The notes beneath the pieces are model-generated. The model saw only the letters and a list, made by a program, of their open reading frames with translations. It did not search any database and was not told the origin of the DNA. This document shows, one piece after another, positions 1 to 51,471 of a stretch of DNA of 64,000 nucleotides (its first letter is position 1; every line of letters starts with the position of its first letter). The translations under genes were made by a program, and so were the position numbers. Origin of the DNA: Macrostomum lignano (Eukaryota); contig NIVC01000309.1 of NCBI GenBank assembly GCA_002269645.1, forward strand, positions 1-64,000. The letters are read 5' to 3'.

Positions 1-146
1 ACGTTGTTACCGGTAAAACTCGAAATTAAAATATGAAATTAGCTAAAAATATTCTTTTTGTTTTATCTAGATTCCTCCAATGGACGTTTGCTGAACTTTG
101 AAAATCTACTTTCAACGTTTGATTCCGGCACATTAACTTGGGGGTG

Positions 147-167
147 GAGAGAGAGAGGAGAGAGAGA

Positions 168-226
<59 letters not shown>

Positions 227-682
227 CACCTCCAATCTCAGGCACTGACACTGTGAAAAGGACTGAAATAAGTCAATTTTTTTTGAGTAGCCGATATTTC
301 GAAATTAAGCCTGAGAGAGAGAGAAGAGAAGCGAGAGAGAGAGGGAGAGAGAGAGAGAGAGAAGAGAGAGAGAGAAGAGAGAGAGAGAGGGAGAGGAGAG
401 AGAGGGAGGGATGAGAGGGAGGAGAGAGAGAGGGAGAGAGAGGGAGAGAGAGGGAGAGAGGGAGAGAGGGAGAGAGAGAGAGGGAGAGAGAGGGAGAGGA
501 GAGAGAGAGGAGAAGAGAGGGAGAGAGGGAGAGAGGGAGAGAGAGAGAGAGGGAGAGAGAGAGGGGGAGAGAGAGAGAGAGAGGAGAGAGGAGAGGAGAG
601 GAGAGAGGGAGAGAGGGAGAGAGGGAGAGAGAGAGGAGAGAGAGAGAGAGAGGGGAGAGAGAGAGAGAGGGAGAGAGAGAGA

Positions 683-722
<40 letters not shown>
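147..722. repeat. Imperfect (GA)n/(GGA) purine microsatellite, two blocks
   Basis: Direct inspection. Confidence 0.95.
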
Positions 723-725
<3 letters not shown>

Positions 726-1767
726 TAGCGCAAAAAGACCGACTGTATGGTTTACTGGAGTTTGGGCCATAGACAACAAAGCTTCAAACAGGCCTGGGGA
801 TTAAGAGGGCAGAAAGGAAGGAGATGTGGAGAGAGACAGAGAATACAACGTGAATTGTTACATTCCATTAACAATGGAGAACCAGAGCTCCATCGTGCAA
901 GAAACAGTGAATGTGTCTGGTGGTTTTCAGGTGAATGTTCGGTGTATTGTTTATTATGAACAACTGTACTTTTAACAGTTGCAATCTGTGATGAGGTTTA
1001 CGGTCACTTTAATTTTAAGCAGTGCCCAAAGATGGTTCCTTTCAGACTTCCTGAGAGGAACTAATAGTACCTATCAAAACAAACAGAATGGATCGTCAGG
1101 TGCATTTCTAGTATAATTAATACAAAAGTACATTTACTAGTGAAAGGGTGCTTCAATAATAAGGAATATAAAATGAAACAAAAGTTCACAACGCTTAAAA
1201 AGCTTCCAAAAATCCTCCTCAGTTCCAAAGCAGCTCAGTTTGGCAACAACCCAGCTTTTTGCGCAGTCAAAAATGACAAATATGGATTTGACAGTTGGTC
1301 GGCAAATAGCGTACATGCGTGTGGGCGTGTTTCTCAGCATCAAGTGGCGGCTGCACAGGCTCTGGAACGCTATTTGCTTGCTGTATGATCGTATTAAAGG
1401 AGAGAGAGACAAGTTGTAGTTAGTAGGGCTGGTTAGACAGTTTTGCATGTAAAAAAATTGGGTAAATAATTACTTGTCCATATAGATGGACAGCTGAAGC
1501 AAAAAGGAGCTGCATTTTCAGATCGTAAAAATTGTTAACACACTATAGAGATGTGACCACCTGTAATATAAGCTCGATAAACTTTTTGTAATCATCCATA
1601 CAGAAAATACATACTTGAAACTTATTTTAAAATTGTTCGTTTTTAAGCTTAGTGATCCATTCAATACACCCAGAAGTATTATTGCTCTCTTCCACCAGTA
1701 AATAAATCACTCACTCAGTAAATAAATAAATAAAACAGTCATATCGATTTATTGTACAACAGCTTAC

Positions 1768-3422: not shown

Positions 3423-3581
3423 CTTCATAGCCAGCGCAATCGTGTTGAGCATGATCAGCAGAAAAATTCCGTATTCGAATGGCGTCGAGGTGACAAACCA
3501 CCAGATCTTGTACTGCAACCGTCGTTGCGGTATGTAGCGCCGCACTGGCTTGGCTTTTAACGCAAATTCGATGCACTTTCG
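3423..3581 (-). CDS. Cav1: Cav1 exon 17 (III-IV linker, IVS1)
   Basis: Not in the ORF track in this frame. gcag|[53 protein letters not shown]|GTTAGT; 159 nt. Confidence 0.93.
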
Positions 3582-4585
3582 CTGCATAAGAAAGAAGGAA
3601 GATCGGGATAATAAATTTAGGGTGTACTACTTGCATTAGCACGCAAAACAAGTGTACGCTGGTGTGTACTCGTACGGATATTGAGAAATCAGTCTGCTAA
3701 TACATAATACATACTTGATTTTTATGGAAATTTTTAATTTTGAAGAGTCAAGCTCGTACTGAAGGTCGTTAAATAATTTTCTCTTTTGTTTAGCTAACAT
3801 GTACTTACTATTATAGTAACTAAAAACGTATATTTCAAAGCAACATTCATACTGATTGTACAAAAAGAAAAGAGCATGTGAGCAAAGTAAAAAAGTGAAA
3901 TAATTGTTAACCAATTGCGATTTGACACAATAAATTTGAGCTGTGAGTAACGATTGTTGCTTCTAAAAGCAGTCTCACTGACACAAAACAACAATCTAAG
4001 GTGATCCAGTCGATCAAGTGCCAACACTTTGCAAAAGGAACCTGACATACTTTGTACTACATGTGTTGTCGACCCTGTGAATTGGTCGGTCGGTCTGAAC
4101 TGGATAAAGGAATGTAAAATGAGAAGCGCATGGAGCTGCAGGGGACGGCGACTTGGCGCAGATTAGCGGGGAACGAACCAATTTAATCCGGGGACCAACT
4201 GAGATCCGCACGCCCGACCCGAAAATCCAATCCCCATGCAGTTAGGAGCCTCATCGACCATTAAGGTTGGCGAATTAAATGTACTATTGCTCCACCGAGA
4301 GAGACTGGAATGAATTTTTGTCAAAGTACTTTTACCGTTCGATAGTTTTTAAGTCTGACAAAAAATATCGGTGTTCAATTATGAACAGAACTACAAGGGT
4401 AAATTTACCAGCCCTTGAATTGCACAGAAACAGCTATAGCTACAGATATTTATGCTCGAACAAGAGTAAAGGGCTCTGCAAACTTCTGCGGAACATCACT
4501 ACAACACTAGCCTAGTATCACAAGAGCAAGAAAAAATACTGATTTCCTAAATACATAAATTTGGCCAACAGATGTCATTCGTGTC

Positions 4586-5797
4586 TCATATCAGCCTCTC
4601 CTCGTTTGGCGGCCGGAGAATGTCCTGCATGCTTTGCTGTCCCGACTTGCCGCTGCCCAGCTCCCGATCGCTGGGCTTATAAACGCCTGTGTCCTTTCGT
4701 CGGTCGCGTATCACTTTAAAAGCTAAGCCAGCTGCAGTTCCGGCTAGCAGAACAAGTAGCAAACCCACTACTAGGCCGACTACCAGACGACTGTCTGCGG
4801 CTGGAGCCTGAGTTCCAGCCTCCACAGGCTCCGTTGTCTGAGCAGTCTGTGGCATCGTTGTCAGAGGCGGAGTCGTCGTTTGCAGAGTCGTCGCTAGCGG
4901 AGTCGTCGCTGGCGGAGTCGTCGCTGGCGGAGTCGAACAGTTGGCGCCGCTGTAACCGTCGGTACAGTTACAGGAGAAAGTCTCCAACGAAGCGATGCTA
5001 GTGCAGAATCCGTGCCCTGAGCAGGGCTCCAGGCCGATCGTGCTTGTGTTGCAGAAATCTCTAGCCTTTAAGCAAAAGTCGCCCCCGTAGCCGGTAGCGG
5101 TGCAGTTGCAGCTCGAGTGGAGGTTCCACTGAAGCCGGGGCAAGCAGCTGCCCCCGTTTGCACAGATGCAGGGGTCCTCATGGCAGCCAGCCAAAACACC
5201 GGAGCCATTCAATAGCTGCACATTCGTCACCTCGGCAATGGCATTATCCGAGGACTCAGTGACCGTCGCATTGGCAAGGCAACCTCTTAGTCCGTCGGTG
5301 CCATTAGTACCACCAAAGGTCATCACAGTCCAGTTGAATATCGCCGTTAATGCTGTCGTCGGATCTGCAAATACACGTAGCAGTTCAGCTCCATCCAAGC
5401 TGACAGTCACGTCGCTAGCATTGGCATCGAGTCTGATGCTGACAGAGTGCCAGTATCCGTCAGTAAGATTAACAGCAGCTTGGTTGCGACTGCCATTCGA
5501 AGGCCAATCAGCAGTCAGATGCTGGAAAGTTATGCCGAGGACCAGTTGCAGCATGCTGTTGGTTTCATTGTCCGTCGACGGTGCGTACAAGCCCCAGATG
5601 GACCAAGCCGGGTGTGACGCTCGAAACTCGAATGTTGCGACAGTTTCAATCGGGATTGCCGAAGCATTTTGGCGCGTCAGATTTGCAACGCCACTGACGT
5701 TAAATGTTGCGACATCGGCCGAAGCATTGGAAATTGGCTGTGTAACCAGAAACAGCACGCCGAAGCAGAAATACAGAAAAAATCGTTGAAGAAACAT
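4586..5797 (-). CDS. crb: Short intronless Crumbs-family protein (403 aa), nested in a Cav1 intron on the same strand
   Basis: Signal peptide; one LamG-like domain (LTDGYWHSVSI...FGG...LRGCL); two EGF repeats; Thr/Pro stalk; TM; tail with GVYKPSDRE (GxYxPxxxE FERM-binding motif) and C-terminal EERLI PDZ-binding motif. Confidence 0.88.
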   Translation of the reverse strand: MFLQRFFLYFCFGVLFLVTQPISNASADVATFNVSGVANLTRQNASAIPIETVATFEFRASHPAWSIWGLYAPSTDNETNSMLQLVLGITFQHLTADWPSNGSRNQAAVNLTDGYWHSVSIRLDANASDVTVSLDGAELLRVFADPTTALTAIFNWTVMTFGGTNGTDGLRGCLANATVTESSDNAIAEVTNVQLLNGSGVLAGCHEDPCICANGGSCLPRLQWNLHSSCNCTATGYGGDFCLKARDFCNTSTIGLEPCSGHGFCTSIASLETFSCNCTDGYSGANCSTPPATTPPATTPLATTLQTTTPPLTTMPQTAQTTEPVEAGTQAPAADSRLVVGLVVGLLLVLLAGTAAGLAFKVIRDRRKDTGVYKPSDRELGSGKSGQQSMQDILRPPNEERLI

Positions 5798-7142
5798 GCT
5801 TCTGCGCCTAACAATTCAACCGAAGCAAAAAAAGTCGTCAGAGCTATAGTTGCACGAAACAGTTGTTACGAATCTATCGCTTCAGTAGGCCGTAGTTGAG
5901 GTAAGCTATATAATCGCTTTCAAACTTGCTCGTTTACTCTCATGCTTAATTAGACGCAGGCTGAAGCATAATAATAGCTGCAATAGCCACGAAGTTCCAC
6001 GAGTGTCGTATGTCAGCACGGGCACGATAGAGAGTAGTAGTAGTACGTCTCTAGTCACGGAGGAAATGCGCCACACTGGTCGCCTTTTATAAGGTACGCT
6101 CGCCGTGGCCTTTCTCGCGAACAGCTAGCTGCTTTCCTTTGTATACACTTCTCTGTATACTCACTATAGCAGCCTGGCCTTCTCTCCAGACACTCACTAA
6201 TGCAGGGCAGAACTGACTGGACGGATTTGGCGAGCGAATCTCTCTTGCCAAAAGTTCTGTTGGTCATGCAGTACTCATGTCGTTTTTTCTTAATGCTTCT
6301 TTTTATTTTCACTCCTGCTTCGCAGAGAACACGGCCCACAGGGAAAGTTTTCTCTCGTTTTAGCTCATGTAAAATCGTTTTTATATCGGGCTGACGGACG
6401 CGGTCGATTGGGCTGAGTTAGCTGAGCAGAGCCGGGAGGTAGGGCTGAGAAGCTTTATGGGTAGAGAAAGGGAGTTGGCCTGGAGGGTTATTGGATGAAA
6501 GAACTGCAGCTTAGGGCGTGGAGATGTATGAGCTCATTCGCTTTCCTCCACTCTCTCCTGCCCTAACCGTCTCACCTGCTGAGCACATCCAGATGGTTTC
6601 TGTCAGACTTAACTGCGCACGACAATAGGCTCTATAATTTCGCGGGGGAGTGCTCGTTTCTCACCCTCAGGCCAGCGTGCATGGTCGCTTGGCGTGCATA
6701 CATGAGCATACATACGGAATGAGGCGCTTTGCATTCAGTGGCAGACTGAACTTGAGTAAGCAAATGATAGAAGAGATAATTATTTTCAGTGAAAAGGATG
6801 ACAGTTTTCTGTTGCAACCACTGCCTATTCTTTACTCCTTAATATCTGTATAATATGACATTAAGTAATTAAAGCTATCAAGCAAGATAAGGAGTCAGAG
6901 GCAAGCACGAGGGACTGTCAAAACAGTTGTGCATATACACGATAATGCAGACACGTTATTAGGAGGTGGGGCAGCTATGTACATGAATGGGGCAGTGGGG
7001 CTTCACCGCATTTTAACTGCTTTAACCCGTGCCCTAATTTAACAGCGCACATGTATAAACATTCTTGCTTGCCTAGATTGACTAAGGGACTGGAGAGTGG
7101 CATAATTTTAACCATTGTCAATTATAGAAGCTTGTCTAGCAG

Positions 7143-8031
7143 ATGTATCAAAGTCGAAGCCTTCTGAGGCAGCGCTCGCTACTTCAACGATCGCTATGCA
7201 CAGCAAAGTCGGGCACCCCAAACGGTCGATTCGACTGCGCAGTGATCGGTGCCGGACACAACGGCCTGGTGGCTGCCGCCTACTTGGCTGGCGCTGGTAA
7301 GAAAGTCTGCGTACTTGAACGGCGTCATGTGATCGGTGGCGCTGCCGTAACTGAAGAGATCGTGCCCGGGTTCAAGTTCAGCCGCTGCTCCTACGTGCTG
7401 AGCCTGCTGCGCCCGAAGGTGATGGAAGACCTTCAGCTAGAACGGCATGGCTTGGTCGTGTACACTCGCGACCCCAGCTCCTATACGCCTCTACTGGAGC
7501 CCGGGTCGAAAACTGGAGCTCAGTCACTTCTACTGGGCCGCGACCACGCGCGGACGCACAGGTCCATCGCCGCATTTTCGCCTCGCGACGCCGACCAGTT
7601 TGTCCGCTACGAAGAGCAGATGGGCCGCCTGGCAGCCAGTCTGGAGCCGCTGCTCGATAACCCGCCGTTCAACTTGCACCACCTGCTGGCATCAAGCGGA
7701 CTTCGCGCGAAAGCAAGGGAACTCGAACGGGCTAGACCGCTTTACCGGATGGCGTCTCAGCTCGGACCGCAGCTGCTGCAGCTCTACGAGCTGCTCACTG
7801 CGCCAACTTCTCGAATTCTGGATCGCTGGTTCGAGAGCGAGCCTTTGAAGGCCACTCTGGCCACGGACAGCGTCATCGGAGCAATGATTTCGCCGGACAC
7901 GCCTGGCAGCGGCTACGTACTACTGCATCACGTGATGGGCGGAGTGAACAATATCCCAGGAGCATGGGGCTTTGTCCACGGCGGTATGGGATCTGTTAGC
8001 AAAGCTATTGCCGAAAGTGCTCAAGCAAGAG
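7143..8031 (+). CDS. PYROXD2: PYROXD2-like FAD oxidoreductase (phytoene desaturase family), exon 1; nested antisense in a Cav1 intron
   Basis: FDCAVIGAGHNGLVAAAYLA Rossmann motif, ERRHVIGGAAVTEEIVPGFKFSRCSYVLSLLRP; Arg/Ser/Leu-rich N-terminus resembling a mitochondrial presequence; G|GTATG donor. Confidence 0.92.
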
Positions 8032-8117
8032 GTATGAAACTACAGGAACCAATTGCTATTAACGAGTAAACTTTGAAGCTCAATTTGATTTAAAACGCTT
8101 AAATCGTTTCTCCTCAG

Positions 8118-8561
8118 GTGCCAAGATATTCACCGATGCTCCGGTCTCTCATATCAAAGTAGTAAATGGCAAAACAGAAGGCGTTGTTCTTGCCGACGGC
8201 AGCGAAGTAGATGCGCCCGTGGTGTTGTCGAACGCCACGCCGAAGGTGACGTTCGAAAACCTGCTGCCGCCAGACTCTCTGCCCGAGGACGATTTTCTGG
8301 CCAGCGTACGGCGAATCGACTACGCCTCGCCAGTGACCAAAATCAACGTGGCCGTTTCCCGACTGCCAAACTTTCTCGCCGATCCCAATCCGGTGTCGGG
8401 CGACTGCCCGGACCATTTTCACGGCACCATTCACCTCAACTCCGACAGCTGCGCCATGATTGATACGGCCTACCGGGCCTGTCAGCAGGGCGGCTACGCT
8501 GATAGGCCGGTCATCGAGATGACTGTGCCCTCGTCGCTTGACGATAGTCTAGCTCCAAAAG
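8118..8561 (+). CDS. PYROXD2: PYROXD2-like exon 2
   Basis: ctcag|GT GCC AAG...VVLSNATP...YASPVTKINVAVSRLPNF...PVIEMTVPSSLDDSLAPK G|GTACG; phase 1 to 1. Confidence 0.9.
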
Positions 8562-8815
8562 GTACGCGGAAGATTGAGCATTTCTATACTAATATACTGC
8601 AGGTCTGGCTGGTTGACTGTCTCCAGAACTTGTTCTAGAAGCGTCCCAGAGGACTGTGCAAGAGAAGTTAGGCTTATCTGAAACGCCTCCCAAATGATTC
8701 AACACTGCTCATAGTTGACTTTATGAACCATGGAAACCACGTTTTCAATTAGCTTTTAATGCGTCTTCTCTCTGTAGGGGGTTTACCGGATAATCCTCGT
8801 CCTAATTACCAATAG

Positions 8816-9201
8816 GTGCACACGTGGTCCAGCTATTTACTCAGTACACACCAAAGCTGCTGCATGGCAAGCGGTGGACGCAGGAGGACAAGGACCGCTA
8901 CACCAGGACCGTGTTCAAATGCATCGACGACTACGCGCCCGGTTTCTCCGCCTCGGTTGTTGGCAGCGACATGCTGACTCCGCAGGACCTAGAAGAGACA
9001 TTCGGTCTCACCGGAGGCAACATCTTCCACGGCGGGATGTCGCTTGACCAGCTTTACTTCATGCGGCCAACCCCCGAGTACTGCGACTATCGCAGTCCGA
9101 TCGGCGGCCTCTACCTGTGCGGCAGCGGGGCTCACCCTGGTGGCGGCGTCATGGGTGCACCTGGACGGCTGTGCGCTTTGGAAGTGCTCAGAGACAGCTA
9201 A
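8816..9201 (+). CDS. PYROXD2: PYROXD2-like exon 3
   Basis: aatag|GT GCA CAC: [11 protein letters not shown]...[11 protein letters not shown]...[19 protein letters not shown], stop TAA. Confidence 0.9.
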
Positions 9202-9570
9202 ATGATGATCACTATTGAAGCCATTCATTTTGAATTCAATAGTTTCCTCTATTATTGAACCTCTATTTCTATTGGAATGGATTTTTTCGGTAATTATAGC
9301 AATATTTAGAATTATTCTATTTTTCAATAAGCAGATGTTAGAATTCGAAATTTATTTAATACATTTTAATAATCACTATACGAACGTAGGAGCAGTCTCA
9401 AAAATCCTTGTCTGAAATCGGTAATATTTTTATGGCTGATCCTGTAGGGTCAATACCAAACTACATCATAAGAATCAGCTGTTCTTGTCTTCAAAATGAA
9501 TCAGTGAATGAATGTATCTTGTCAGCCAAAAAGTAAATCATACAAAACAACAGGTCTGCAATGACGCAGA

Positions 9571-10011
9571 CTACAGTTCTTTCTTCTCAGCAGCGTCCTC
9601 GCTGCCAGGCTGCTTGGCGGCCTTCTTCGCCGCTTCGTCGGTGCCTTGAAGCGTCGGCAGCTCGTCGTACTCGCCCGGCTTGTGCGCCGCCTCGCAGGCG
9701 GAGTTGCACCGGGCGAACTCCTCCGCCAGCTCGTGCTCGCTGACGCACTCGCGCCGGCAAACCTGCAGCTTGCTGAGCCGCTTTGCGCGCATGATTTCTT
9801 GGAAAGCCTCCTCGGCTTCGGCGCGCAGCTTCGGATCCTCCGTGTTCATCAGCATCATGCGGTCGATCTCAGGGCCGGCCTTGGGGTCCTTCTTCATGAA
9901 GTCCATGTTGACGTCATCGGCGTCCGGGTAGAAGGCCAGAGCTGGGAGCGACAGCTGCGTGAGCAGCACCAGCAGCACCGGGAGGGTTTCTCTTCTAAAA
10001 GCCGGCCGCAT
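9571..10011 (-). CDS. Small secretory-pathway protein (146 aa; signal peptide, CX3C-X12-CX3C, C-terminal KKEL), nested in a Cav1 intron
   Basis: MRPAFRRETLPVLLVLLTQLSLPALA signal peptide; GC-rich coding-like composition against AT-rich flanks; ends AEKKEL-stop; minus-strand AATAAA at 9351-9356. An upstream in-frame ATG exists at 10059. Confidence 0.75.
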   Translation of the reverse strand: MRPAFRRETLPVLLVLLTQLSLPALAFYPDADDVNMDFMKKDPKAGPEIDRMMLMNTEDPKLRAEAEEAFQEIMRAKRLSKLQVCRRECVSEHELAEEFARCNSACEAAHKPGEYDELPTLQGTDEAAKKAAKQPGSEDAAEKKEL

Positions 10012-10645
10012 TTCCAAGACAGACGGGTATATCAAACTTTCAAATCGGGTAGCTCGCATGTTGGACCGGTTTTCAGCATTTTTATACCGGCTTGCCAGCT
10101 GATCTCAGTGTCCAATTGCAACGCGACCCGTCATGCCACATCAACACAGAGCAGGTGCGCCGTTCGATAGGAGAACTTTGGGACATTTAGTTTTCCCAAT
10201 TGCAGTCTGTTCAAACACGCTGGTTCTCTATTTGATTTCAGTTGCTTCGATTCTGTCACAATCCAGCGCATTGTTCAACCATAAAGGTAAACACACGCCG
10301 ATTGTGTTTAAACAGTTCACTTCGTATTACTTGACATTGAGCGAGAGTTATTTATGCAAGCCACCCATAGTCCATAGGGATTTCAAGCTGCCAGATTTTA
10401 AGCAGAGCCACCATTGACTTAGAAGCCTTAGCGCTCGATAATATCAGCATTTTCCAAGTCAATTTTTTCGATTTTCTAACTCAGTATACTTGAAGACGTC
10501 TGTTTCCAGGACTTTGATAAGTAATTCGGCGCTCACGATTTATACTAATAGCTTCCTCAAAATGCATGTTTAGTCTTCTACATAATGTGCAGCCAGTTCT
10601 TCATATCATCTACAAAGCCGCTCCCCATTTCGGTTGGGCTGGATA

Positions 10646-10787
10646 GGCTTTTCATAGCGGCCATAGTCTATGGCCAGCCTTGCCGGGCTGGAGGGGCTTT
10701 TCATAGCGGCCATAGTCTATGGCCAGCCTTGCCGGGCTGGAGGGGCTTTTCATAGCGGGCATAGTCTATGGCCAGCCTTGCCGGGCG
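10646..10787. repeat. Three copies of a 49-bp unit containing palindrome GGCCATAG-T-CTATGGCC
   Basis: Units start at 10646, 10695 and 10744. Confidence 0.85.
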
Positions 10788-10900
10788 TGGAGCTATTTAT
10801 AGAACTCTATGTTCGGCAAGGAACGGAGTTTTTTATTGCTTCGGCGCGAAGAACAAAAAAACGACGCGGGCTAATAACTAACCATGGAAAAACTGCTCAC

Positions 10901-11102
10901 CTGATTCTTGTCCAACTCGCAATTCCTGTACTCTTGCTCGCCCTCCTGTTGAAAAGTGACAATGACAAAGCCAACAAAGATGTTGACCATAAAGAAGGCG
11001 ATCACGATGATGAAAGCGACGTAAAACAACGCCATTGGGGGCCGATTGTTGTAGGTGCCACCCTGGCCCTCCTTATCTGAGTCGATGGACATGTACAACA
11101 GC
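10901..11102 (-). CDS. Cav1: Cav1 exon 16 (IIIS6, III-IV linker)
   Basis: LLYMSIDS...[32 protein letters not shown]|GTGAG; 202 nt. Confidence 0.95.
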
Positions 11103-11198
11103 CTGCAGTAGATAGAGAGAAATTAGTTTTCTTAATGCTCTACTGTCAGTAGCTCGTAGGCTTGTAGGATGAAAAAAGTAATATCGAACTCTACTAAC

Positions 11199-12559: not shown

Positions 12560-13580
12560 GACTCCTCAGACTAGAATTGGGATTCCTGAGCCTATAGAGT
12601 TAGGATTCTAGATTGTAGTCTAGACTAGATTGTAGTCCAGAGTTGGGATTCCTCAGACTGGAATTGATTCCTTACATTAGAGTTGGGATTCCTTAGATTA
12701 GAGTTGAGATTCCTCAGACTGGATTTGGGATTCCTTAGATTGGAGTTGCGATTCTTTAGATTAGAGTTGGGATTTCTTAGATTTGAGTTGGGATTCTTTA
12801 GATTAGAGTTGGGATTCCTGAGACTAGAGTTGGGATTCCTCAGACTAGAGTTGGGATTCCTTAGATTAGAGTTGGGATTCCTTAGATTGGAGTTGGGATT
12901 CCTCAGACTAGAGTTGGGATTCCTTGGATTAGAGTTGGGATTCCTTAGATTGGAGTTGGGATTCCTCAGACTAGAGTTGGGATTCCTTGGATTAGAGTTG
13001 GGATTCTTTAGATTAGAGTTGGGATTCCTGAGACTAGAGTTGGGATTCCTCAGACTAGAGTTGGGATTCTTTAGATTAGAGTTGGGATTCCTTAGATTGG
13101 AGTTGGGATTCCTCAGACTAGAGTTGGGATTCCTTGGATTAGAGTTGGGATTCCTTAGATTGGAGTTGGGATTCCTCAGACTAGAGTTGGGATTCCTTGG
13201 ATTAGAGTTGGGATTCCTTAGATTGGAGTTGGGATTCCTCAGACTAGAGTTGGGATTCCTTGGATTAGAGTTGGGATTCCTCAGACTGGATTTGGGATTT
13301 CTTAGATTGGAGTTGCGATTCTTTAGATTAGAGTTGGGATTCCTTAGATTGGAGTTGGGATTCTTTAGATTAGAGTTGGGATTCCTGAGACTAGAGTTGG
13401 GATTCTTTAGATTAGAGTTGGGATTCCTCAGACTGGATTTGGGATTTCTTAGATGGGAGTTGGGATTCTTTAGATTAGAGTTGGGATTTCTTAGATTGGA
13501 GTTGGGATTCCCCAGATTGGAGTTGGGATTCCCCAGACTGGAGTTGGGATTCCTTAGATTGGAGTTGGGATTCCTCAGAC
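12560..13580. repeat. 21-bp minisatellite (GAGTTGGGATTCCTCAGACTA) between exons 13a and 13b
   Basis: Direct inspection. Confidence 0.95.
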
Positions 13581-13788
13581 AATACTGCACAATATTTACA
13601 ATCCGGCTATATTAATTTAGACGCCTCAGTCAGACTTTAAAATAAGCACACCGGAAACTTATTGTCCAGTAATAATAATAAATAAAGTAGATACACAAAC
13701 GAAAAGAAATAACAGCAAAAGCCCATAGAGACACGCGACACCCAGCAGCTGAGAGCAGTCGATTTCAGCTGGATGTCTGGCAACCTAC

Positions 13789-14411: not shown

Positions 14412-14471
14412 CTTCAAGATGATTTCTATAGTAAATACCGTGGTGAAGAAGTAGTCAAATTTGTTTAAAAT
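14412..14471 (-). CDS. Cav1: Cav1 exon 12 (IIIS2, 60 nt)
   Basis: ILNKFDYFFTTVFTIEIILK; tag/GTAAG; same size and content as vertebrate CACNA1C exon 21/22. Confidence 0.92.
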
Positions 14472-14632
14472 CTACAATCAAATTGGAGTTCAGGTTGGGA
14501 AATTGATTAATAGAACTCGAGATTCAGGTAGGTGGAAAGCGAAATTTTGGCCGTTTTGGTCTAAGTCGGTAGAAGCAGTGGCGTACGCAGGGATTGTAAC
14601 TGGAACAGGCTGTACCCCAAGGGGCGCCAATA

Positions 14633-15900
14633 TTTGCGTCTTGGTGGGCGCCCCTGTCTCTTGGTGGGCGCCCCGTCTCTTGATGGGCGCGCCTGTCTCT
14701 TGGTGGGCGCCCCGTCTCTTGGTGGGCGCCCCGTCTCTTGGTGGGCGCCCCTGTCTCTTGGTGGGAGCCGCTGTCTCTTGGTGGGAGCCGCTGTCTCTTG
14801 GTAGGCGTCCCTGTCTCGTGATGGGAGCCCCTGTCTCTTGGTGGGAGTCCCTGTCTCGTGGTGGGAGTCCCTGTCTCTTGGTGGGAGTCCCTGTCTCTTG
14901 GTGGGAGTCCCTGTCTCGTGGTGGGAGTCCCTGTCTCTTAATGGGAGCCCCTGTCTGTCTCTTGGTGGGAGTACCTGTCTCTTGGTGGGCGCCCCTGTCT
15001 CTTGGTGGGCGCCCCTGTCTCTTGGTGGGCGCCCCTGTCTCTTGGTGGGTGCCCCTGTCTCTTGGTGGGCGCCCCTGTCTCTTGGTGGGTGCCCCTGTCT
15101 CTTGGTGGGAGTCCCTGTCTCGTGGTGGGAGTTCCTGTCTCTTAATGGGAGCCGTCTGTCTCTTGGTGGGCGCCCCTGTCTCTTGGTGGGCGCCCCTGTC
15201 TCTTGGTGGGCGCCCCTGTCTCTTGGTGGGCGCCCCTGTCTCTTGGTGGGCGCCCCTGTCTCTTGGTGGGCGCCCCTGTCTCTTGGTGGGTGCCCCTGTC
15301 TCTTGGTGGGCGCCCCTGTCTCTTGGTGGGCGCCCCTGTCTCTTGGTGGGTGCCCCTGTCTCTTGGTGGGCGGCGCCTCTCTGTCTCTTGGTGGGTGCCC
15401 CTGTCTCTTGGTGGGCGCCCCTGTCTCTTGGTGGGCGCCCCTGTTTCTTGGTGCGCGCCCTTGTCTCTTGGTGGGTGCCCCTGTCTCTTGGTGGGCGGCG
15501 CCTCTCTGTCTCTTGGTGGGTGCCCCTGTCTCTTGGTGGGAGTCCCTGTCTCGTGGTGGGTGTTCCTGTCTCTTAATGGGAGCCCCTGTCTGTCTCTTGG
15601 TGGGAGTCCCTGTCTCTTGGTGGGCGCCCCTGTTTCTTGGTGGGCGCCCCTGTCTCTTGGTGGGTGCCCCTGTCTCTTGGTGGGCGCCCCTGTCTCTTGG
15701 TGGGCGCCCCTGTCTCTTGGTGGGCGCCCCTGTCTCTTGGTGGGCGCCCTGTCTCTTGATGGGCGCCTCTGTCTCTTGGTGGGCGCCCCTGTCTCTTGGT
15801 GGGCGCCCCTGTCTCTTGGTGGGCGCCCCTGTCTCTTGGTGGGCGCCCCTGTCTCTTGGTGGGCGCCCCTGTCTCTTGGTGGGCACCCCTGTCTCTTGGT
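14633..15900. repeat. 20-bp minisatellite (TCTTGGTGGGCGCCCCTGTC)
   Basis: Direct inspection; preceded by a CAGTGGCGTACGCAGGG hAT-MITE-like end near 14577 whose partner end I could not find. Confidence 0.95.
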
Positions 15901-15921
15901 CAGAGCGTCTTGTAGGCTCAC

Positions 15922-16295
15922 CTTGTTTCTGGGATTCTCCGAGTTGACGGGTTCCTCGGCGGCCAGCATGGCGCTGCTGACGAGGATGCAGACCAGCACC
16001 ACGCTGCCGAAGTAAGAGTGGTTGCAGATCCTGTGGCACAGCACCCGGAACCGGTTGGTGCTGCTGAAGACGAACAACGAGGACGCCTCTGGAATTGGGC
16101 GGACTTTCTCTTTGATGTTCAGTTCGGACAGCCGGCGCGGTCTGGCGGTCGTCACCGGCGTCTCCTCAGCCTCGGAGTCGTCGCCACCGTCGCCGTCGCC
16201 TTCGGGCTCTTCGCCGAGTGTCGGCATTCGACGATCGATGTCGTCGTCGTCGCCGCCTAAATCAAGGCGAATGCTTCGCTCCATGCCCGACGCGG
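15922..16295 (-). CDS. Cav1: Cav1 exon 11 (II-III loop, IIIS1)
   Basis: ...PIPEASSLFVFSSTNRFRVLCHRICNHSYFGSVVLVCILVSSAMLAAEEPV...RNK|GTGAG; phase 1 to 0. Confidence 0.93.
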
Positions 16296-43762: not shown

Positions 43763-44804
43763 CCACGCAGTTGAGGGAACAGAATGAACTGCATACTTTT
43801 TTGTTTTATTTCGGCGGAACCGTTCCGTACTGCATCTTGGCTGGGTTGTATATTTACAATCCTGATGCATTCTGTTTGAAGAAAAATGTCTCAGCCCAAG
43901 AGTAACCGGTCCGATCTCTGCCCCAATATTGCCGAATGCAACTGTGTAACTTCCCGAGTGCTTTATTGCCCGACGGGAGGCATTTAGGCCGGTAAAGCAT
44001 GGCCGGTCCAGTTGGGCAGGGGAAGGCGAGGGCTCGTCTTTGGCGGTCGCGCGCTCTCCATTTACGATGCAACAGATACTGCATAGAGGGAACATGCAGC
44101 ATTATACTTTTAGGCGGGACGGGGCCGAACACTTGGAAAGGATTGTATAAAAAGGCTCTGCGTCCACCCTTCGAGCGATGACTTGCGGATGCCGCAGAAA
44201 TGATGCAGCACCGAGAGGCTGGCCCTGCAGGTCTAGGCTAGCTTGGAGCTTGGAGCTGGATTGCCATATAGATGGGGTGAAATTAGGCGGGGGCAGGGGG
44301 GCAGGGGGGGGGGCAGGGGGTCTCGACTTTGCCTCCTCCAGGTTTTTGGACGCGTCCAAAGAATCGCGTGTCGGAGGCAATCAATAGTGTCTGAGGGAGG
44401 GAGATGAAGGACAGGAGGGCGAATCATACCAGCTGCCGCGTTGTCTGGCGCGGTGGCATTTCCGAATGCTCCGCGCCGTTCACCTCGAGCCCTCGCAGCT
44501 GCCCCAGGCTGGGCCACCATCCCTATCCTTTGGAACTTGGCTTACCTGCACCCCAATATTTCCTCCTCTGTCCTCTCTATCCCTCCTCATGACCTGGCAA
44601 CTTCTGTTTGACTTACCAACAGAAAAAGTCAGTGTGTGCGCGCATCCCGGGAAATCGAGGGTGAAGAGGGGATGGGTGTAGACAGTTGCTTTTAGTCTTC
44701 TTGTGTTTCACCTAGCAAGAGAATGCAGCCATGCACTTTTGCTGGGCGAATACTGGACTGCACACATTGATGGTGTATTGGTTCCCAGATGCGAACCCTA
44801 ACCC

Positions 44805-45396
44805 GGGCTATCAAACCCGAACCATCAAACCCGAACCATCAGACCCGAACCATCAAACCCGAATTATCAAACCCGAACCATCAAACCCGAACCATCAAAC
44901 CCGAATTATCAAACCCGAATTATCAAACCCGAACGATCAAACCCGAATTATCAAACCCGAATTATCAAACCCGAACCATCAAACCCGAACCATCAAACCC
45001 GAACCATCAAACCCGAACGATCAAACCCGAATTATCAAACCCGAACCATCAAACCCGAATTATCAAACCCGAACCATCAAACCCGAATTATCAAACCCGA
45101 ACCATCAAACCCGAACCATCAAACCCGAACCATCAAACCCAAACCATCAAACCCGAATTATCAAACCCGAACCATCAAACCCGAACCATCAAACCCGAAC
45201 CATCAAACCCAAACCATCAAACCCGAACCATCAAACCCGAACCATCAAACCCGAACCATCAAACCCGAACCATCAAACCCGAACCATCAAACCCGAACTA
45301 TCAAATCCGAACCATCAGACCCGAACCATCAAACCCGAACGATCAAACCCGAATTATCAAACCCGAACCATCAAACCCGAACCATCAAACCCGAAC
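44805..45396. repeat. 14-bp minisatellite (ATCAAACCCGAACC)
   Basis: Direct inspection. Confidence 0.94.
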
Positions 45397-46304
45397 CTGG
45401 AACGCATCTTCAATAAACGAACCACGAGACAAAGAAGTCGATAATTTTTCTCTATACCTTCATGCTACTATCAGTAAAATAGTTGTAAAATTGACGCCTG
45501 AAGTTTCACGAGTCTGTCTCACAGATTGAAGAATTCACATTCTCAAGACAGATCGAAATTTCACAATAAGAAATTAGGAACTGAGAAGCTATTAAATATA
45601 TATTGATTCATTTAATTTATTGATTCTTAAAAAATGCAGGTACATTAAGTCCTTTTGAAAAGTGCATAACAAACGTCTAGTCAAAAAAATAATTTGTAGG
45701 AAGTGAAAATTGAGGGAATGAAATTGGGAAGCGCCACTCGGAGACATCCCAGTTCACCAGATGGGGTGGAATTTTATTTTCAATCAATTTTACACCCAGC
45801 GGGGGGCACTGCCCGTGGCCGTCGAGCCGGTGTTACTAAAGCGAGACGAAGCTGAGTTTCCCGCTTTTGAGAAAAGACGACATTTGAGGTTATTGCTCTT
45901 AACCTGGCGTCTTATCTTTTTCCTCAACTCGAGCTTTGCTCCAGACTTTTAGTCTGAGCCGAAAGCTATATGGAGGATACGTAAAAGGTGGGGATCGAGA
46001 TGAGGAGACCTATGCGCGTGATTGGGATCTGAAGTAAACACTGGCCTGAGCTGCCTCCGTGCCAACTGGGTCGCCGCCTTGAGCTGAGGGAAGATCTCCT
46101 CACTCGCGCCTACAGCTTGCAGGTTTGTTAAAATAGATAGCCTGAGATTTGCACCTTTGCTTCTTTACTCTTTGCCTGTATTGGCTGCTTTTTAAACTGA
46201 CTGCCGACATGTAGCGTTGTTAAATTGATCCAAGGGGAACTGACTGCAATTGTTGCATTTGGTCAGACTGTGCGTATACTGAGAGAATACTGGGATGCGA
46301 TCTG

Positions 46305-46745: not shown

Positions 46746-47611
46746 GAGCGGAAAACGCAGAACATCACAGGGAAAGAGGGCATGCATGGAGTCAAAAATA
46801 GCCATTAAGACTCCAGTCGGCGATTAAAATTATTTTTATCACGGTAATTTAAGTCAGTAAAAATAGGGGCTGGCCCAGTTCGCCCACTGAGCAATATGAG
46901 ACATAAATTTCATTACGCAACAGTTTCAGCCGGCGATGACATTAAAATGTTACGGAGAGGCACCTGTGTCTCCATCGTCTCTGCTTAAAGAGCCTGGAAA
47001 GATCGCAAAGACAACCCGTTGCTGGGGGAGGTGAGGTGGGGATTGGGACGAATCTGCAGCCAGTGCTCGCAGCGGGGGGCTGCAGGAGAAGAAGGGATCG
47101 AAGGAGGAAAGCGAGACGGGCTGGTAAGAGGCCACAGGGGATGCCAGGTTGGCCCTTTAGGAAGTCGCATTGGACGGCCTCGCCCTTGCCTGCCCGGGAC
47201 GCGGCGGAAACCTCCCATAGGGATAATAATCCCAGTCATTTCTGCCTAGTTAGTATTACGCGCGTGTACTTATACAAAATTTGCATCTCCGCTGCTTGAA
47301 TCCCAGGAGCTCAAACCCTTCTCTCCGCCCCTCAAAGGACTCCGCTTTGATATTCATTGCCGGCACCAGACGGCTATGGGAAACTTACTTCGGCTGACTC
47401 GGGCATCGATGACTGAGGCTGGTTTATTCTTTGAATAAAAATGACCCTGATATTAAGCAGGGGTGCTGAATACGGACAAATAGTCTGGCTGTTTAGTTCT
47501 AAACTAAACACCTATTTGAGTGGCGCCACATCTGATTAGCGTCTCATCTAAATAGCGCCACATCTAAATAGCGCCACATCTGATTATCGTCACATCTGAT
47601 TATCGCCACGA

Positions 47612-47976
<365 letters not shown>

Positions 47977-48589
47977 TAAAACACTAAGGCTCACGAGCTC
48001 GTATGTCCAGCTTCGCCCAGCCCACCGATAACAAAAACTTCAACTGCACAGTTTAAAAAACTGGAATCAAAAAGCTGAAATTCCCTATTAAGCCGGGTCA
48101 CGAATTTCTCTCGCGGTTCTGTCGCCAAAGCAGCAGCTCGCACGAAATGCCGCACTGGTTGCTCCTCCCCGCAGGAGTGCCGTCTGCCCACTGTTCGAAC
48201 CAGCCTTCGGTCTTGTCCCTTCCCTCCTCCTCATCCTATAAAGAAGCAGTTTGCTCAGTCCCGGTGGCTTCAAAAGAAGCAGCCAAATTCGCAACTCGAG
48301 GCTTTGAAGCGGGGCGTCCAAGCGCTACACACAGCCGGCACCCGCAGCCACGCATAGCAATGGTTAGCTATAATAAAAAGCGATGTAGCGGCTGCTCTGG
48401 CAGAATAGTATAATTCGATAATGCCCCACTGGGACAAGGGGGATTAGCCTAATGAGGCCAGCCTAGGCCACTCTACTGTCTTCGGTGTGGGAGCGTTGGT
48501 CAGGATTTCTCATTGCGGGAGGCGCCATTTCTGTTGAGGGGCGCCATTTTTGTTGAGGGGCGCCTTTTAGATCTAGGGGCATCATTTTG

Positions 48590-48945
48590 CTGGCACCAGA
48601 GGCGCCAGCACCAGAGGCGCCAGCACCAGAGGCGCCAGCACCAGAGGCGCCAGCACCAGAGGCGCCAGCACCAGAGGCGCCAGCACCAGAGGCGCCAGCA
48701 CCAGAGGCGCCAGCACCAGAGGCGCCAGCACCAGAGGCGCCAGCACCAGAGGCGCCAGCACCAGAGGCGCCAGCACCAGAGGCGCCAGCACCAGAGGCGC
48801 CAGCACCAGAGGCGCCAGCACCAGAGGCGCCAGCACCAGAGGCGCCAGCACCAGAGGCGCCAGCACCAGAGGCGCCAGCACCAGAGGCACCAGCACCAGA
48901 GGCGCCAGCACTAGAGGCACCAGCACCAGAGGCGACAGCACCAGA
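48590..48945. repeat. 15-bp GC-rich minisatellite (GCACCAGAGGCGCCA)
   Basis: Direct inspection. Confidence 0.95.
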
Positions 48946-49256
48946 AGCGAACTCGATGACAACCGGAACTAGAGAACTCAGCTGGGTTGAGGACAGCCAA
49001 TATACTGTTTTTCCGGAACTAGCGACACACTCGCCTTCCAAATGCCGCAAACCGGATGTTAAGGAGGTAAGGTAAGAGCAGGAAGAGGCTAAAAGGCAGA
49101 CGACAGGCAGACGAAGGACGAATTGGCATTTTATTGCGCAAGCGTGGCTTGCTCACTAATGGAGCCGTAATTTGGTGGGCCAAAAATCGTGGAATAGTCT
49201 GAGAAAAGAAGCAGGCAGAAAATAAATATCACATTGGGAATAATTTTAGGGGAAAA

Positions 49257-49480: not shown

Positions 49481-50232
49481 GTATCTCAATCGTAAAAATC
49501 TCCGGCAAATCTCAGTGAGACGAATTCAAACATAATGATTATCAAGAGAGCAAATCTCCAGGGAAAAGTCTAAAGGATTTAAATCCCAGTGAAAAGCCGG
49601 CCATCAAAGGCAGCAGCTGCAACCAGAAGCTGGAGATGGCTGAGCCAGCGCAGTCAGGCATAAACAAATCAGGTGCAATACAAGCTGGATGCACAGCGGG
49701 GGCTCCCATAATTGCCTGTTTTTTCCGTTCTCAATCTGCACTCCTGAGCCCCCTTAAATACCTAATTCCTAGAAATCCGTCAACAATTTTGTAATTAGCC
49801 AGCCGGCTCAGGCGTCAGCTCAGCTGAGCCGAAGCCGAGAAATCATTGGCTTACCTTTTAATAAGCGGAAGCCCCCCAAAACACGGCCCTCAGCGCTGGC
49901 ATTCGAGATTTTTATCCCCCCACCCGCCCCCCCGAAATCCAGCTGCGCGGCTGCACAAATCTGTAGCGCCGCAATGGAGTGGGGCAGGTAGGGATGGCCG
50001 GGAGGAGAAATTTAATCCCGAATCAAAGCTGCACCGGCACAGTTGAAGCTGCCCTGGGTTTTTTATTTAGATTCGGCTTTCACTTCGAGACTGCGGCCCG
50101 GTCGAGATGCGACTTCTTGCGGCTAACTGGGATGGAGTGGCGCTTGCACTGCGGCTCCAAGTGCCTGTCTATCTGACTGGGCGCTTGTCTACCTGCCTAT
50201 CCACCTGCATAATTAATAGTAATGCTAATAAC

Positions 50233-50547
<315 letters not shown>

Positions 50548-51471
50548 TCAACTAGTTGAATAGTTTAGCAGCTTTCTTCATCGACTTGCATCCAGCAGCT
50601 GCACAGTGATGTGCATAAGCCTGCCCTGAGAAGACTGCTATCCAGCACATGTATCAATTTGTATCAGCAGCTAATTTTTAGAATTTAGCAAGCAATAAAA
50701 AAGTGGCACAAAATTTTGTCTGCACTGCAATTTTAGAGACTAACCCAGCAAACTGTTACAATATCTGTAATACGATAAAGATTTTCAATCAACTATATCA
50801 AGAAATACCTCGTAACTGTTGAAACTTACTTAGCCGCTCGCAGTTTGCAGTGTGCTCAAACCTTGAGCAGAGTTAGCCTAGCTGCTTGCTCTACCAGCAG
50901 TGCAGTAGTCGATGCCATTATATTGTCCGCGTCGCAACAATATTCAGTGAAAGTGTTGAGCTCGGTACACTTTCTTCAACGGCGCTCTCCGGTTGGAGTC
51001 AAGCGAAGAGTCTCTTGTCGAGAGAAAAAAAGCGAACACTGATTGCCTGGATTTGCCCTGCGCTACTCGGTTCGCGGCTTAGGGTGGAAAGCACGCGGTT
51101 GCTTAAGATAATCCGCTAGGCTTAGTAGCGGGATTGAGAGAGAGAGAGGGGGGTCCGGCATTGGCTCCCCGGCCTGACAGCCAGGTCCTGACGCCATTGG
51201 ACGTCATCAGTAGCTCTTTTGGGGGAGTTAGAAAAATCCCGATTCCCAGAATTATTTAATTCGACACGCCCGATCGACTGCGGGCCAGCCAAGAGCCGCT
51301 GCGGCAAACCGAGTGAGGATTTGAGGGGAAATCAGAAAACTGGGGTCTGCCTCGGGCCAGCAGCTTTCTCGCGTGTTTTTATAGGTCATTTTTGCAATAG
51401 TTCCGACTTTAAGACAATTTAACAAAGCTCTCAGGTTTCAGTCTCAATTCCTAGTTTTCTTACTGTCCGTA

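What the first reader, a model, noticed from the sequence alone, without database searches (positions are those of the whole stretch)
4586..5797. Intronless miniature Crumbs nested in the same orientation inside a calcium-channel intron
Seen: a 403-aa single-exon ORF with signal peptide, one LamG-like domain, two EGF repeats, mucin-like stalk, TM and a tail ending GVYKPSDRE...LRPPNEERLI. Established: GxYxPxxxE (FERM-binding) plus terminal ERLI (binds Stardust/PALS1 and Par6 PDZ) is diagnostic of Crumbs; canonical Crumbs has dozens of EGF repeats and several LamG domains, while vertebrate CRB3 is a short form. Inference: a lineage-specific intermediate 'mini-Crumbs', possibly a retrocopy of the 3' end of a full-length crumbs mRNA that acquired a signal peptide, with a complete signalling tail.
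Basis: partly seen in the sequence, partly recalled or inferred. Interest (0 to 1): 0.75.

Follow-up and report, generated by a model that had tools for sequence, protein, structure and literature searches.

The report
Short Crumbs polarity gene in flatworm
A single-exon gene of the flatworm Macrostomum lignano encodes a 403-residue member of the Crumbs cell-polarity family with a much reduced outer part and a complete canonical signalling tail; it sits inside an intron of a calcium-channel gene. It is a real but fairly ordinary new family member that public annotation calls only "hypothetical".

Summary
Window 4586-5797 (minus strand) is an intact 403-aa ORF. It has a signal peptide, a divergent LamG-like domain, two EGF repeats, a Thr/Pro-rich stalk, one transmembrane helix and a 40-42-aa tail. 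The tail carries the exact Crumbs signature: RxxxGxYxPS, a Glu at tail position 16 and a C-terminal ERLI.

The organism is Macrostomum lignano. The identical protein is already in GenBank as a single-exon gene model derived from transcripts, named only "hypothetical / EGF-like domain-containing". Two homeologous copies exist.

The gene lies in the same orientation inside a 7.3-kb intron of an L-type (Cav1) calcium-channel alpha-1 gene. That intron holds two other genes, and the arrangement is the same at the homeologous loci.

A separate multi-exon long Crumbs with its own ERLI tail (Mlig013136) exists elsewhere in the genome. The short form is not the last exon of a longer gene.

The retrocopy idea is not established. 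The gene is intronless where the long gene has an intron, but similarity to the long gene is only 26-44%, the two architectures are not colinear, and there is no poly(A) remnant. Intermediate-size Crumbs proteins are already known (C. elegans EAT-20).

Verdict: a new, unrecognised member of a known family, of modest interest.

The parts
4586..5797 (-). Complete single-exon coding sequence of the short Crumbs paralogue (403 codons plus TGA). Identical to the GenBank Macrostomum lignano gene model on NIVC01000282.1.
5717..5797 (-). Signal peptide, aa 1-27 (MFLQRFFLYFCFGVLFLVTQPISNASA|DV).
   Evidence: Hydropathy and the -3/-1 rule, (heuristic)
5183..5716 (-). Divergent LamG-like (LNS) domain, aa ~28-205. 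Contains DGYWHSV and GLRGC, with a probable C173-C205 pair. Heavily N-glycosylated by sequon count.
   Evidence: below the Pfam cut-off; consistent LamG-only hits
5072..5182 (-). EGF repeat 1, aa 206-242. This is the 'W-N' type EGF that follows LamG in Crumbs and neurexin.
4937..5065 (-). EGF repeat 2, aa 245-287 (C249...C287).
   Evidence: Pfam EGF E 2e-6, above the cut-off
4790..4936 (-). Thr/Pro-rich mucin-like stalk, aa 288-336. It is encoded by a 15-nt DNA repeat and differs in length between homeologs.
4715..4786 (-). Transmembrane helix, aa 338-361.
   Evidence: AF2 helix 336-369 with pLDDT 84-89
4589..4714 (-). Cytoplasmic tail, aa 362-403. The FERM-binding motif RKDTGVYKPS (aa 367-376) is at window 4670-4699. 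The PDZ-binding ERLI (aa 400-403) is at window 4589-4600.
3582..10900 (-). Host intron (7319 bp, GT...AG) of the L-type calcium-channel alpha-1 gene, lying between the domain III S6 exon and the domain IV S1 exon.
10901..11122 (-). Host exon upstream of the intron (domain III S6, ends ...CELDKNQ). The 5' boundary is approximate.
3423..3581 (-). Host exon downstream of the intron (III-IV linker and domain IV S1, [12 protein letters not shown]...).

Best explanation
This is a genuine, separately annotated, single-exon gene of Macrostomum lignano (transcript cluster Mlig007680). It encodes a type I membrane protein of the Crumbs family with a reduced ectodomain: one LamG-like domain, two EGF repeats and an O-glycosylated stalk. 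Its cytoplasmic tail is canonical.

Inferred mechanism:
- The protein is delivered to the apical membrane of epithelial cells.
- Its C-terminal ERLI binds the PDZ domains of Stardust/PALS1 and Par6.
- Its juxtamembrane RxxxGxYxPS...E motif binds FERM proteins (Moesin, Yurt/EPB41L5, Expanded type).
- Together these build the Crumbs apical polarity scaffold.
- The small glycosylated ectodomain acts as a spacer or a weak cis/homophilic interaction module.

It acts alongside a conventional long, multi-exon Crumbs (Mlig013136) encoded elsewhere in the genome. It most likely arose within the flatworm lineage from a Crumbs gene by an old duplication. Whether that went through DNA or RNA cannot be told.

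Shown here: the ORF, its domains and motifs, placement of the tail with Crumbs, nesting in the channel intron, the existence of the long paralogue, and a gene model based on transcripts.

Inferred: partner binding, apical localisation, function and origin.
For: - ORF and motifs.
- Tail against the PDB: the only hit is the Drosophila Crumbs cytoplasmic domain (4wsi/4yl8), aligned end to end, E 0.0066.
- A profile of five independent Crumbs tails scores the ORF at 41.6 bits, against at most 9.7 bits for 20,000 shuffles. It is the only scoring ORF in the window.
- In an alignment of nine Crumbs tails, all nine invariant positions are kept: R, G, Y, P, E and E-R-L-I.
- These motifs are what the literature calls the signature of Crumbs proteins (PMC5968619), with Y10 and E16 essential (PMC4359734).
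- In the exhaustive HMMER search, the hits anchored at the C-terminus are Crumbs proteins (dragonfly Crumbs E 3.5e-7, tick Crumbs) and the long Crumbs of M. lignano.
- EGF and LamG evidence.
- GenBank holds a single-exon gene model with the identical protein. That annotation derives from a genome-guided RNA-seq transcriptome (PMC5730564).
- The homeolog g1 keeps the ORF, and its TM and tail are 100% identical.
- No other EGF or LamG coding sequence occurs anywhere in the 64-kb window.
Against: - No expression level, tissue or localisation data were found.
- Partner proteins in M. lignano were not examined.
- The two aPKC sites of bilaterian Crumbs (TxGTY) are not conserved as such. The tail reads DTGVY, with Val at -1 and Thr shifted to -3, so regulation may differ.
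- The LamG assignment is below the Pfam cut-off, and the single-sequence AF2 model was uninformative (pLDDT 40).
- One homeolog (g2) is frameshifted in the stalk repeat.
- The homeologs are too similar (about 98%) for a meaningful dN/dS estimate: 12 non-synonymous against 8 synonymous differences.
- No orthologue was seen outside M. lignano, so conservation cannot be used to argue for function.
Confidence: 0.75

Rival explanations
1. Origin by retroposition. In this view it is a processed copy of the 3' part of the long crumbs mRNA that landed in the channel intron and later gained a signal peptide.
For: - The coding sequence has no intron, whereas the long gene has a ~2.9-kb intron exactly at the TM/tail junction and further introns upstream.
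- M. lignano genes average about 5 introns (PMC5730564).
- The tail is closest to that of the long M. lignano Crumbs (44% against 33-38% for other species). Both share RRK[D/E][S/T]G.
- An imperfect 13-nt direct repeat flanks the unit at 4432-4444 and 5842-5854.
Against: - Only 26-36% identity in the EGF and TM segments.
- The LamG region does not detectably match any LamG of the long gene or its paralogues.
- The architecture is not colinear: LamG-EGF-EGF-stalk-TM against LamG-EGF-TM.
- There is no A-rich tract after the 3' UTR.
- A flanking repeat of that quality (11 of 13) is expected by chance many times in 2.6 kb.
- The neighbouring 162-aa gene in the same intron is also intronless, so lack of introns is weak evidence.
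Confidence: 0.2
2. Origin by domain shuffling. In this view a LamG-EGF module from another gene (Caspr/neurexin-like or another EGF/LamG protein) was joined to a Crumbs TM and tail segment.
For: - The best LamG-region hits are Caspr/neurexin-IV-like proteins (E 3e-8 to 1e-7). Crumbs LamG domains score weaker (E ~1e-3).
- M. lignano has an expanded set of EGF/LamG membrane proteins with various tails.
Against: - At 25-30% identity the ranking of LamG hits carries no phylogenetic weight.
- Crumbs-like LamG-EGF-EGF fragments (P0042, P0056) and the last LamG of tick Crumbs also align colinearly.
- No donor gene was identified.
Confidence: 0.12
3. It is the terminal exon of a longer upstream crumbs gene, not a gene of its own.
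For: None found. A polypyrimidine tract followed by AG lies 10 nt upstream of the ATG (window 5809-5808) and could accept a splice.
Against: - In-frame stops lie immediately upstream, and a good signal peptide sits at the ATG.
- No EGF or LamG coding sequence occurs anywhere else in the 58 kb upstream.
- The upstream neighbours are an opposite-strand oxidoreductase gene and channel exons.
- The transcript-based annotation gives a single-exon CDS at three loci.
- Splicing from the host exon (phase 0) to that AG would be out of frame (read from the sequence).
Confidence: 0.03
4. It is a decaying or functionless young duplicate: transcribed, but with no role.
For: - No orthologue was detected outside M. 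lignano.
- One of three homeologous copies is frameshifted.
- dN/dS between copies is not clearly below 1.
- The aPKC sites are altered.
Against: - The divergence from any parent (26-44% identity) implies long survival with an intact 403-codon frame.
- All nine invariant tail residues, all EGF cysteines, the signal peptide and the TM helix are preserved.
- The frameshift lies in a 15-nt repeat near a contig end and may be an assembly indel.
Confidence: 0.08

Closest known systems
Canonical Crumbs (Drosophila Crb, vertebrate CRB1/CRB2, C. elegans CRB-1, and the long Crumbs of M. lignano, Mlig013136)
   Same: - Type I topology.
- EGF and LamG modules next to the membrane.
- A tail of about 40 aa with RxxxGxYxPS, E16 and a C-terminal ERLI. 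All invariant tail positions are kept.
   Different: - One LamG-like domain and two EGF repeats, instead of 2-4 LamG and about 20-30 EGF.
- A mucin-like stalk.
- A single exon.
- The aPKC motif TxGTY is changed to DTGVY.
CRB3 (vertebrates) and C. elegans CRB-3: the short Crumbs forms
   Same: A small protein with the same tail logic. A Ser/Thr/Pro-rich glycosylated ectodomain segment, as also seen in the 177-aa CRB3-like protein P0052.
   Different: CRB3 has no EGF or LamG domain at all, whereas this protein keeps a folded LamG-EGF-EGF module. No specific sequence affinity to CRB3 was shown.
C. elegans EAT-20
   Same: An intermediate-size Crumbs paralogue that coexists with a long Crumbs. It has few EGF repeats and conserved FERM- and PDZ-binding motifs (PMC4359734).
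   Different: EAT-20 is 808 aa with three EGF repeats and no LamG. It is an independent nematode lineage, and no orthology is implied.
Neurexin / Caspr (neurexin-IV) LNS-EGF modules
   Same: These are the best sequence matches to the LamG-EGF1 part.
   Different: Their cytoplasmic tails are quite different (4.1-binding and class I/II PDZ motifs of other sequence). Their ectodomains carry several LNS domains plus discoidin and other domains.

Membership tests
Crumbs (CRB) family | FERM-binding motif RxxxGxYxPS next to the membrane, with Tyr at tail position 10 and Glu at position 16 | tested here: met
   RKDTGVYKPS at aa 367-376 is an exact match. Counting from R364, Y10 and E16 are in place. 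The motif definition comes from PMC5968619 and PMC4359734.
Crumbs (CRB) family | C-terminal class II PDZ-binding motif ERLI as the last four residues | tested here: met
   aa 400-403 are ERLI, followed by the stop codon.
Crumbs (CRB) family | Short cytoplasmic domain (about 37-40 aa) after a single TM helix, type I topology with a signal peptide | tested here: met
   TM at aa 338-361, a tail of 40-42 aa, and an N-terminal hydrophobic signal with an ASA|D site (heuristic methods).
Crumbs (CRB) family | Tail placed with Crumbs by profile or sequence search, not only by motif | tested here: met
   The sole PDB hit is the Drosophila Crumbs tail, E 0.0066, end to end. The independent Crumbs-tail HMM gives 41.6 bits, E 1e-10, against at most 9.7 bits for shuffles.
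Crumbs (CRB) family | Extracellular EGF repeats | tested here: met
   Pfam EGF E 2e-6, above the cut-off. Two six-cysteine repeats.
Crumbs (CRB) family | Extracellular laminin-G domain(s) | tested here: inconclusive
   Laminin_G_2 scores 20.5 bits against a cut-off of 22.9 (E 7e-4). Weak hits are consistently LamG-only. The AF2 single-sequence model was uninformative.
Crumbs (CRB) family | Two aPKC phospho-sites TxGTY (a cnidarian and bilaterian feature, not universal) | tested here: not met
   The tail reads DTGVY: Thr at -3 and Val at -1. This feature is absent from sponge, placozoan and C. elegans Crumbs (PMC5968619), so it does not define the family.
Crumbs (CRB) family | Binds Stardust/PALS1 and Par6 PDZ domains and FERM proteins; localises apically | not testable with these tools
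   This needs binding assays and localisation in the animal.
Processed retrocopy | Intronless where the parent gene has introns | tested here: met
   Single-exon CDS. The long Crumbs has an intron at the TM/tail junction and others upstream.
Processed retrocopy | Poly(A) remnant at the 3' end | tested here: not met
   No A-run in the 700 nt downstream of the stop codon.
Processed retrocopy | Target-site duplications flanking the insert | tested here: inconclusive
   Only an 11/13 direct repeat at 4432-4444 and 5842-5854, which is at chance level.
Processed retrocopy | Colinear similarity to the parent mRNA | tested here: not met
   26-36% identity, limited to the EGF, TM and tail segments. The short form has an extra EGF and a stalk, and its LamG does not match.
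CRB3-type short Crumbs | Ectodomain lacking EGF and LamG domains | tested here: not met
   EGF repeats and a LamG-like domain are present.

The most novel reading that the evidence does not exclude
The short form is a functional, flatworm-specific 'minimal' Crumbs. It would be matured as its own mRNA from inside the calcium-channel transcription unit. One route is spliced-leader trans-splicing at the AG 10 nt upstream of its ATG, so that its expression is coupled to that of the host Cav1 gene. In that case its single LamG-EGF module would define the smallest ectodomain still sufficient for Crumbs ectodomain functions.
Probability: 0.15. Interest if true: 0.5.

Novelty: new member of a known kind. 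Interest (0 to 1): 0.33.

Why it matters
Crumbs ectodomain function is much less understood than tail function. A natural paralogue that keeps the full canonical tail but only one LamG-like domain and two EGF repeats offers a way in. It occurs in a flatworm for which transgenesis exists (PMC5730564), so what the ectodomain contributes could be tested directly.

It also corrects an annotation: three GenBank and UniProt entries named 'hypothetical' or 'EGF-like domain-containing' are Crumbs-family proteins. It adds a flatworm case to the repeated, independent appearance of shortened Crumbs paralogues (CRB3, EAT-20).

The nesting of three genes in one Cav1 intron, conserved between homeologs, is a tidy example of nested genes but not unusual.

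Tried and rejected
- **Tail-only search of the 5.8-billion-protein index**. It returned nothing, not even the protein itself, so it was uninformative.
- **Whole-protein search of the same index**. It found only the protein's own cluster.
- **Search of that index with the long Crumbs**. It returned only M. lignano paralogues and no other flatworm, so no flatworm phylogeny could be built.
- **Single-sequence AlphaFold2**. pLDDT was 40 and only the signal and TM helices were confident. No fold search was run on it.
- **Literature and expression look-ups.** The terms crumbs + Macrostomum, crumbs + planarian and 'Mlig007680' found nothing specific. Three supplement sets held no expression data for this gene.
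- **dN/dS between homeologs**. There were too few differences.
- **Retrocopy hallmarks**. No poly(A) remnant; the only flanking repeat is at chance level.
- **Rejected: last exon of a larger gene**.
- **Rejected: chance ORF**.
- **Rejected: CRB3 orthologue**, because EGF and LamG are present.
Full report
**Observation.** The window holds an intact ORF at 4586..5797 on the minus strand, 403 codons from ATG to TGA. It cannot be extended upstream: an in-frame stop lies six codons before the ATG and more follow.

The protein has these parts:
- An N-terminal hydrophobic signal (aa 1-19) with a ...SNASA|DV cleavage context.
- A second hydrophobic segment at aa 338-361, the transmembrane helix.
- 16 N-glycosylation sequons, all N-terminal of the membrane segment.
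- 15 cysteines, 14 of them in the ectodomain, arranged as a LamG-type pair (C173/C205) and two six-cysteine EGF repeats.
- A 48-residue stalk with 16 Thr and 10 Pro.

Pfam finds EGF at aa 257-286 (E 2e-6, above the cut-off). It finds Laminin_G_2 at aa 99-179 (E 7e-4, 20.5 bits against a cut-off of 22.9). Against the PDB, the best match is the LNS-EGF unit of neurexin-1alpha. That alignment is colinear over aa 81-242 and pairs DGYWHSV with DNQWHNV and GLRGCLA with GFQGCLA. With the LamG part alone the hits are weak (E 0.08-0.9), but 10 of 11 are LamG-fold proteins: neurexin, SHBG and laminin alpha-2 LG. The one reservation is that the LamG domain is divergent and below threshold. A single-sequence AlphaFold2 run did not help (mean pLDDT 40).

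**Organism and public status.** The identical 403-aa protein is encoded on Macrostomum lignano contig NIVC01000282.1 (assembly GCA_002269645.1) as a gene of 1212 nt, that is, a single-exon CDS. Its 90% cluster holds two homeologous copies. They are PAA65284.1 (Mlig007680g1, 408 aa) and PAA49883.1 (Mlig007680g2, 316 aa), named 'hypothetical protein' or 'EGF-like domain-containing protein'.

The GenBank annotation of this assembly derives from a genome-guided RNA-seq transcriptome. Its gene boundaries were cut using trans-splicing and poly(A) evidence (PMC5730564). The model therefore rests on transcripts and is separate from the host gene model. I could not see the reads themselves.

**The tail is a Crumbs tail.** After the membrane segment the sequence reads KVI-RDRRKDTGVYKPSDRE-LGSGKSGQQSMQDILRPPNE-ERLI.
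- RKDTGVYKPS matches RxxxGxYxPS exactly, and the protein ends in ERLI.
- The literature calls these two motifs 'the signature of Crumbs proteins' (PMC5968619). Tyr10 and Glu16 of the tail are the residues essential in Drosophila (PMC4359734). Counting from R364, both are in place.
- The 45-residue tail, searched alone against all PDB chains, finds one sequence only: the Drosophila Crumbs cytoplasmic domain (4wsi/4yl8). The alignment runs from the juxtamembrane Arg to the last residue of both, E 0.0066.
- An HMM built from five other Crumbs tails (dragonfly, Drosophila, the long M. lignano protein and two metagenomic or transcriptomic proteins) scores this ORF at 41.6 bits. The best of 20,000 shuffles of its own tail reaches 9.7 bits. 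No other ORF of the window scores.
- In an alignment of nine tails, the nine invariant columns (R, G, Y, P, E, E, R, L, I) are all kept.
- One difference: the bilaterian aPKC motif TxGTY reads DTGVY here.

**Relatives.** The exhaustive HMMER search of 1.84 billion cluster representatives found no full-length relative other than the protein's own cluster. The remaining 74 hits are generic EGF or LamG matches.

Hits that align through to the C-terminus are Crumbs proteins. They include a dragonfly Crumbs (E 3.5e-7), a tick Crumbs, nematode CRB-1 fragments and a 177-aa CRB3-like protein. They also include P0032/P0078 of M. lignano itself.

P0078 (Mlig013136g1, partial, 490 aa) has LamG-EGF-LamG-EGF-TM and the tail ...RRKESGTYGPS...PPPEERLI. 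Its gene is multi-exonic. A ~2.9-kb intron falls at the TM/tail junction. Further Crumbs-like EGF and LamG exons lie up to at least 6 kb upstream and match dragonfly Crumbs at up to 126 bits. So a conventional long Crumbs exists in the same genome.

Searching with P0078 brought back only M. lignano paralogues. These share a LamG region with it but carry unrelated tails. Among everything seen, only Mlig013136 and Mlig007680 have Crumbs tails.

**Not a terminal exon.** Several results argue against that reading.
- In-frame stops lie upstream and a signal peptide sits at the ATG.
- tblastn with a full-length Crumbs, the long M. lignano Crumbs and the short form itself finds no other EGF or LamG coding sequence anywhere in the 64-kb window.
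- The upstream neighbours are unrelated genes (see below).

**Genomic setting.** Minus-strand ORFs across about 2.5-40 kb of the window encode a voltage-gated calcium-channel alpha-1 subunit.
- The exon ending ...CELDKNQ at 10901 is followed by GTGAGC.
- The exon starting [12 protein letters not shown]... at 3581 is preceded by a polypyrimidine tract and AG.
- The joined product aligns without a gap to human Cav1.2 residues 1045-1150 (E 6e-46). L-type channels score far above N/P/Q/R- and T-type channels.
- The intron therefore spans 3582..10900 (7319 bp), and the Crumbs gene lies in it in the host's orientation.

The same intron also carries two other genes. One is an opposite-strand FAD/NAD(P) oxidoreductase gene (7140..9198; NAD_binding_8 E 1e-11). 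The other is a same-strand 162-aa ORF with a signal peptide (9571-10059).

At the homeologous locus L004 the public annotation shows a 1973-aa Ion_trans/GPHH/Ca_chan_IQ gene spanning these same three nested genes. L005 shows the same order. The whole intron is about 97% identical between the copies.

**Homeologs.** Copy g1 differs from the window copy by 12 non-synonymous and 8 synonymous changes and by a 5-residue length change in the stalk repeat. The TM and tail are identical. That is too few differences to measure selection. Copy g2 is frameshifted inside the Thr/Pro repeat, while the TM and tail remain intact in another frame 0.4 kb from a contig end. This is either an assembly indel or a very recent lesion.

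**Origin.** The retrocopy proposal has some support.
- The gene lacks introns, against an average of about 5 introns per M. lignano gene.
- The long gene has an intron exactly where the short one has none.
- The tail is closest to the long M. lignano tail (44% identity against 33-38% for other species). Both share RRK[D/E][S/T]G.

Several results weigh against it.
- Identity in the other alignable parts is 26-36%.
- The LamG region does not detectably match the LamG domains of the long gene or its paralogues. Its best hits are Caspr/neurexin-IV-like.
- The domain order is not colinear.
- There is no A-tract after the 3' UTR.
- The only flanking direct repeat (11 of 13 nt) is at chance level.

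I conclude that the gene is an old, diverged Crumbs paralogue, probably born within the flatworm lineage, and that the mode of duplication cannot be decided here.

**Mechanism.** By homology with the family, the tail should recruit Stardust/PALS1 and Par6 through ERLI. It should recruit FERM proteins through the juxtamembrane motif. This would place the protein in the apical polarity scaffold beside the long Crumbs. The altered aPKC sites suggest different regulation of FERM binding. The small, heavily glycosylated ectodomain may serve as a spacer or as a weak interaction module. All of this is inference; nothing here tests binding, localisation or phenotype.

**Comparison and novelty.** Crumbs families with a long form and shortened paralogues are known. 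Vertebrate CRB3 has no EGF or LamG. C. elegans has CRB-3, and also EAT-20 at 808 aa with three EGF repeats (PMC4359734). The present architecture (one LamG-like domain, two EGF repeats, a stalk) was not seen in any other protein retrieved, and I found no paper on flatworm Crumbs. It nevertheless falls within the known range of the family. I file it as a new, previously unrecognised member of a known kind, of modest interest.

Noticed in passing
window 3582-10900: One 7.3-kb intron of the Cav1 gene carries three genes: the short Crumbs (-), a 572-aa FAD/NAD(P) oxidoreductase (+, 7140..9198) and a 162-aa ORF with a signal peptide and no Pfam hit (-, 9571-10059). The same trio in the same order is annotated at the homeologous loci L004 and L005.
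   Followed up: partly
L005 10001-11423 (NIVC01003770.1): Homeolog g2 (PAA49883.1, 316 aa) is frameshifted within the Thr/Pro repeat. The TM and Crumbs tail are still intact in another frame, 0.4 kb from the contig end. This is either an assembly indel or a very young pseudogene.
   Followed up: partly
proteins P0088, P0089, P0090, P0092 (M. lignano Mlig031842g2, Mlig001267g3, Mlig022007g1, Mlig017317g1); L002 24811-25424: M. lignano has an expanded set of EGF/LamG single-pass membrane proteins. They share 51-59% identity with part of the long Crumbs ectodomain but carry unrelated cytoplasmic tails. One of them lies next to the long crumbs gene on the opposite strand.
   Followed up: no
window 5798-5914: A polypyrimidine tract followed by AG at 5809-5808, 10 nt upstream of the ATG, is a candidate spliced-leader trans-splice acceptor. 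A TATA-like element lies at about 5907-5914. If the gene is trans-spliced, it could be matured from the host pre-mRNA.
   Followed up: no
window 43-800, 1970-2430, 12628-13611, 14455-16000, 44716-45526, 47547-48039, 48456-49150, 50071-50564: Numerous long microsatellite and minisatellite arrays give spurious long ORFs in several frames. Several of them lie in introns of the calcium-channel gene.
   Followed up: no
window 63315-63734 (+): An ORF with a weak DDE_3 transposase match (E 2e-4, below the cut-off). It is probably a remnant of a DNA transposon.
   Followed up: no
window ~10396: The GenBank contig NIVC01000282.1 ends inside the host intron (window 10397 maps to locus position 1). The window therefore comes from a more contiguous assembly than GCA_002269645.1. 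The overlapping 7.1 kb is 99.9% identical.
   Followed up: partly
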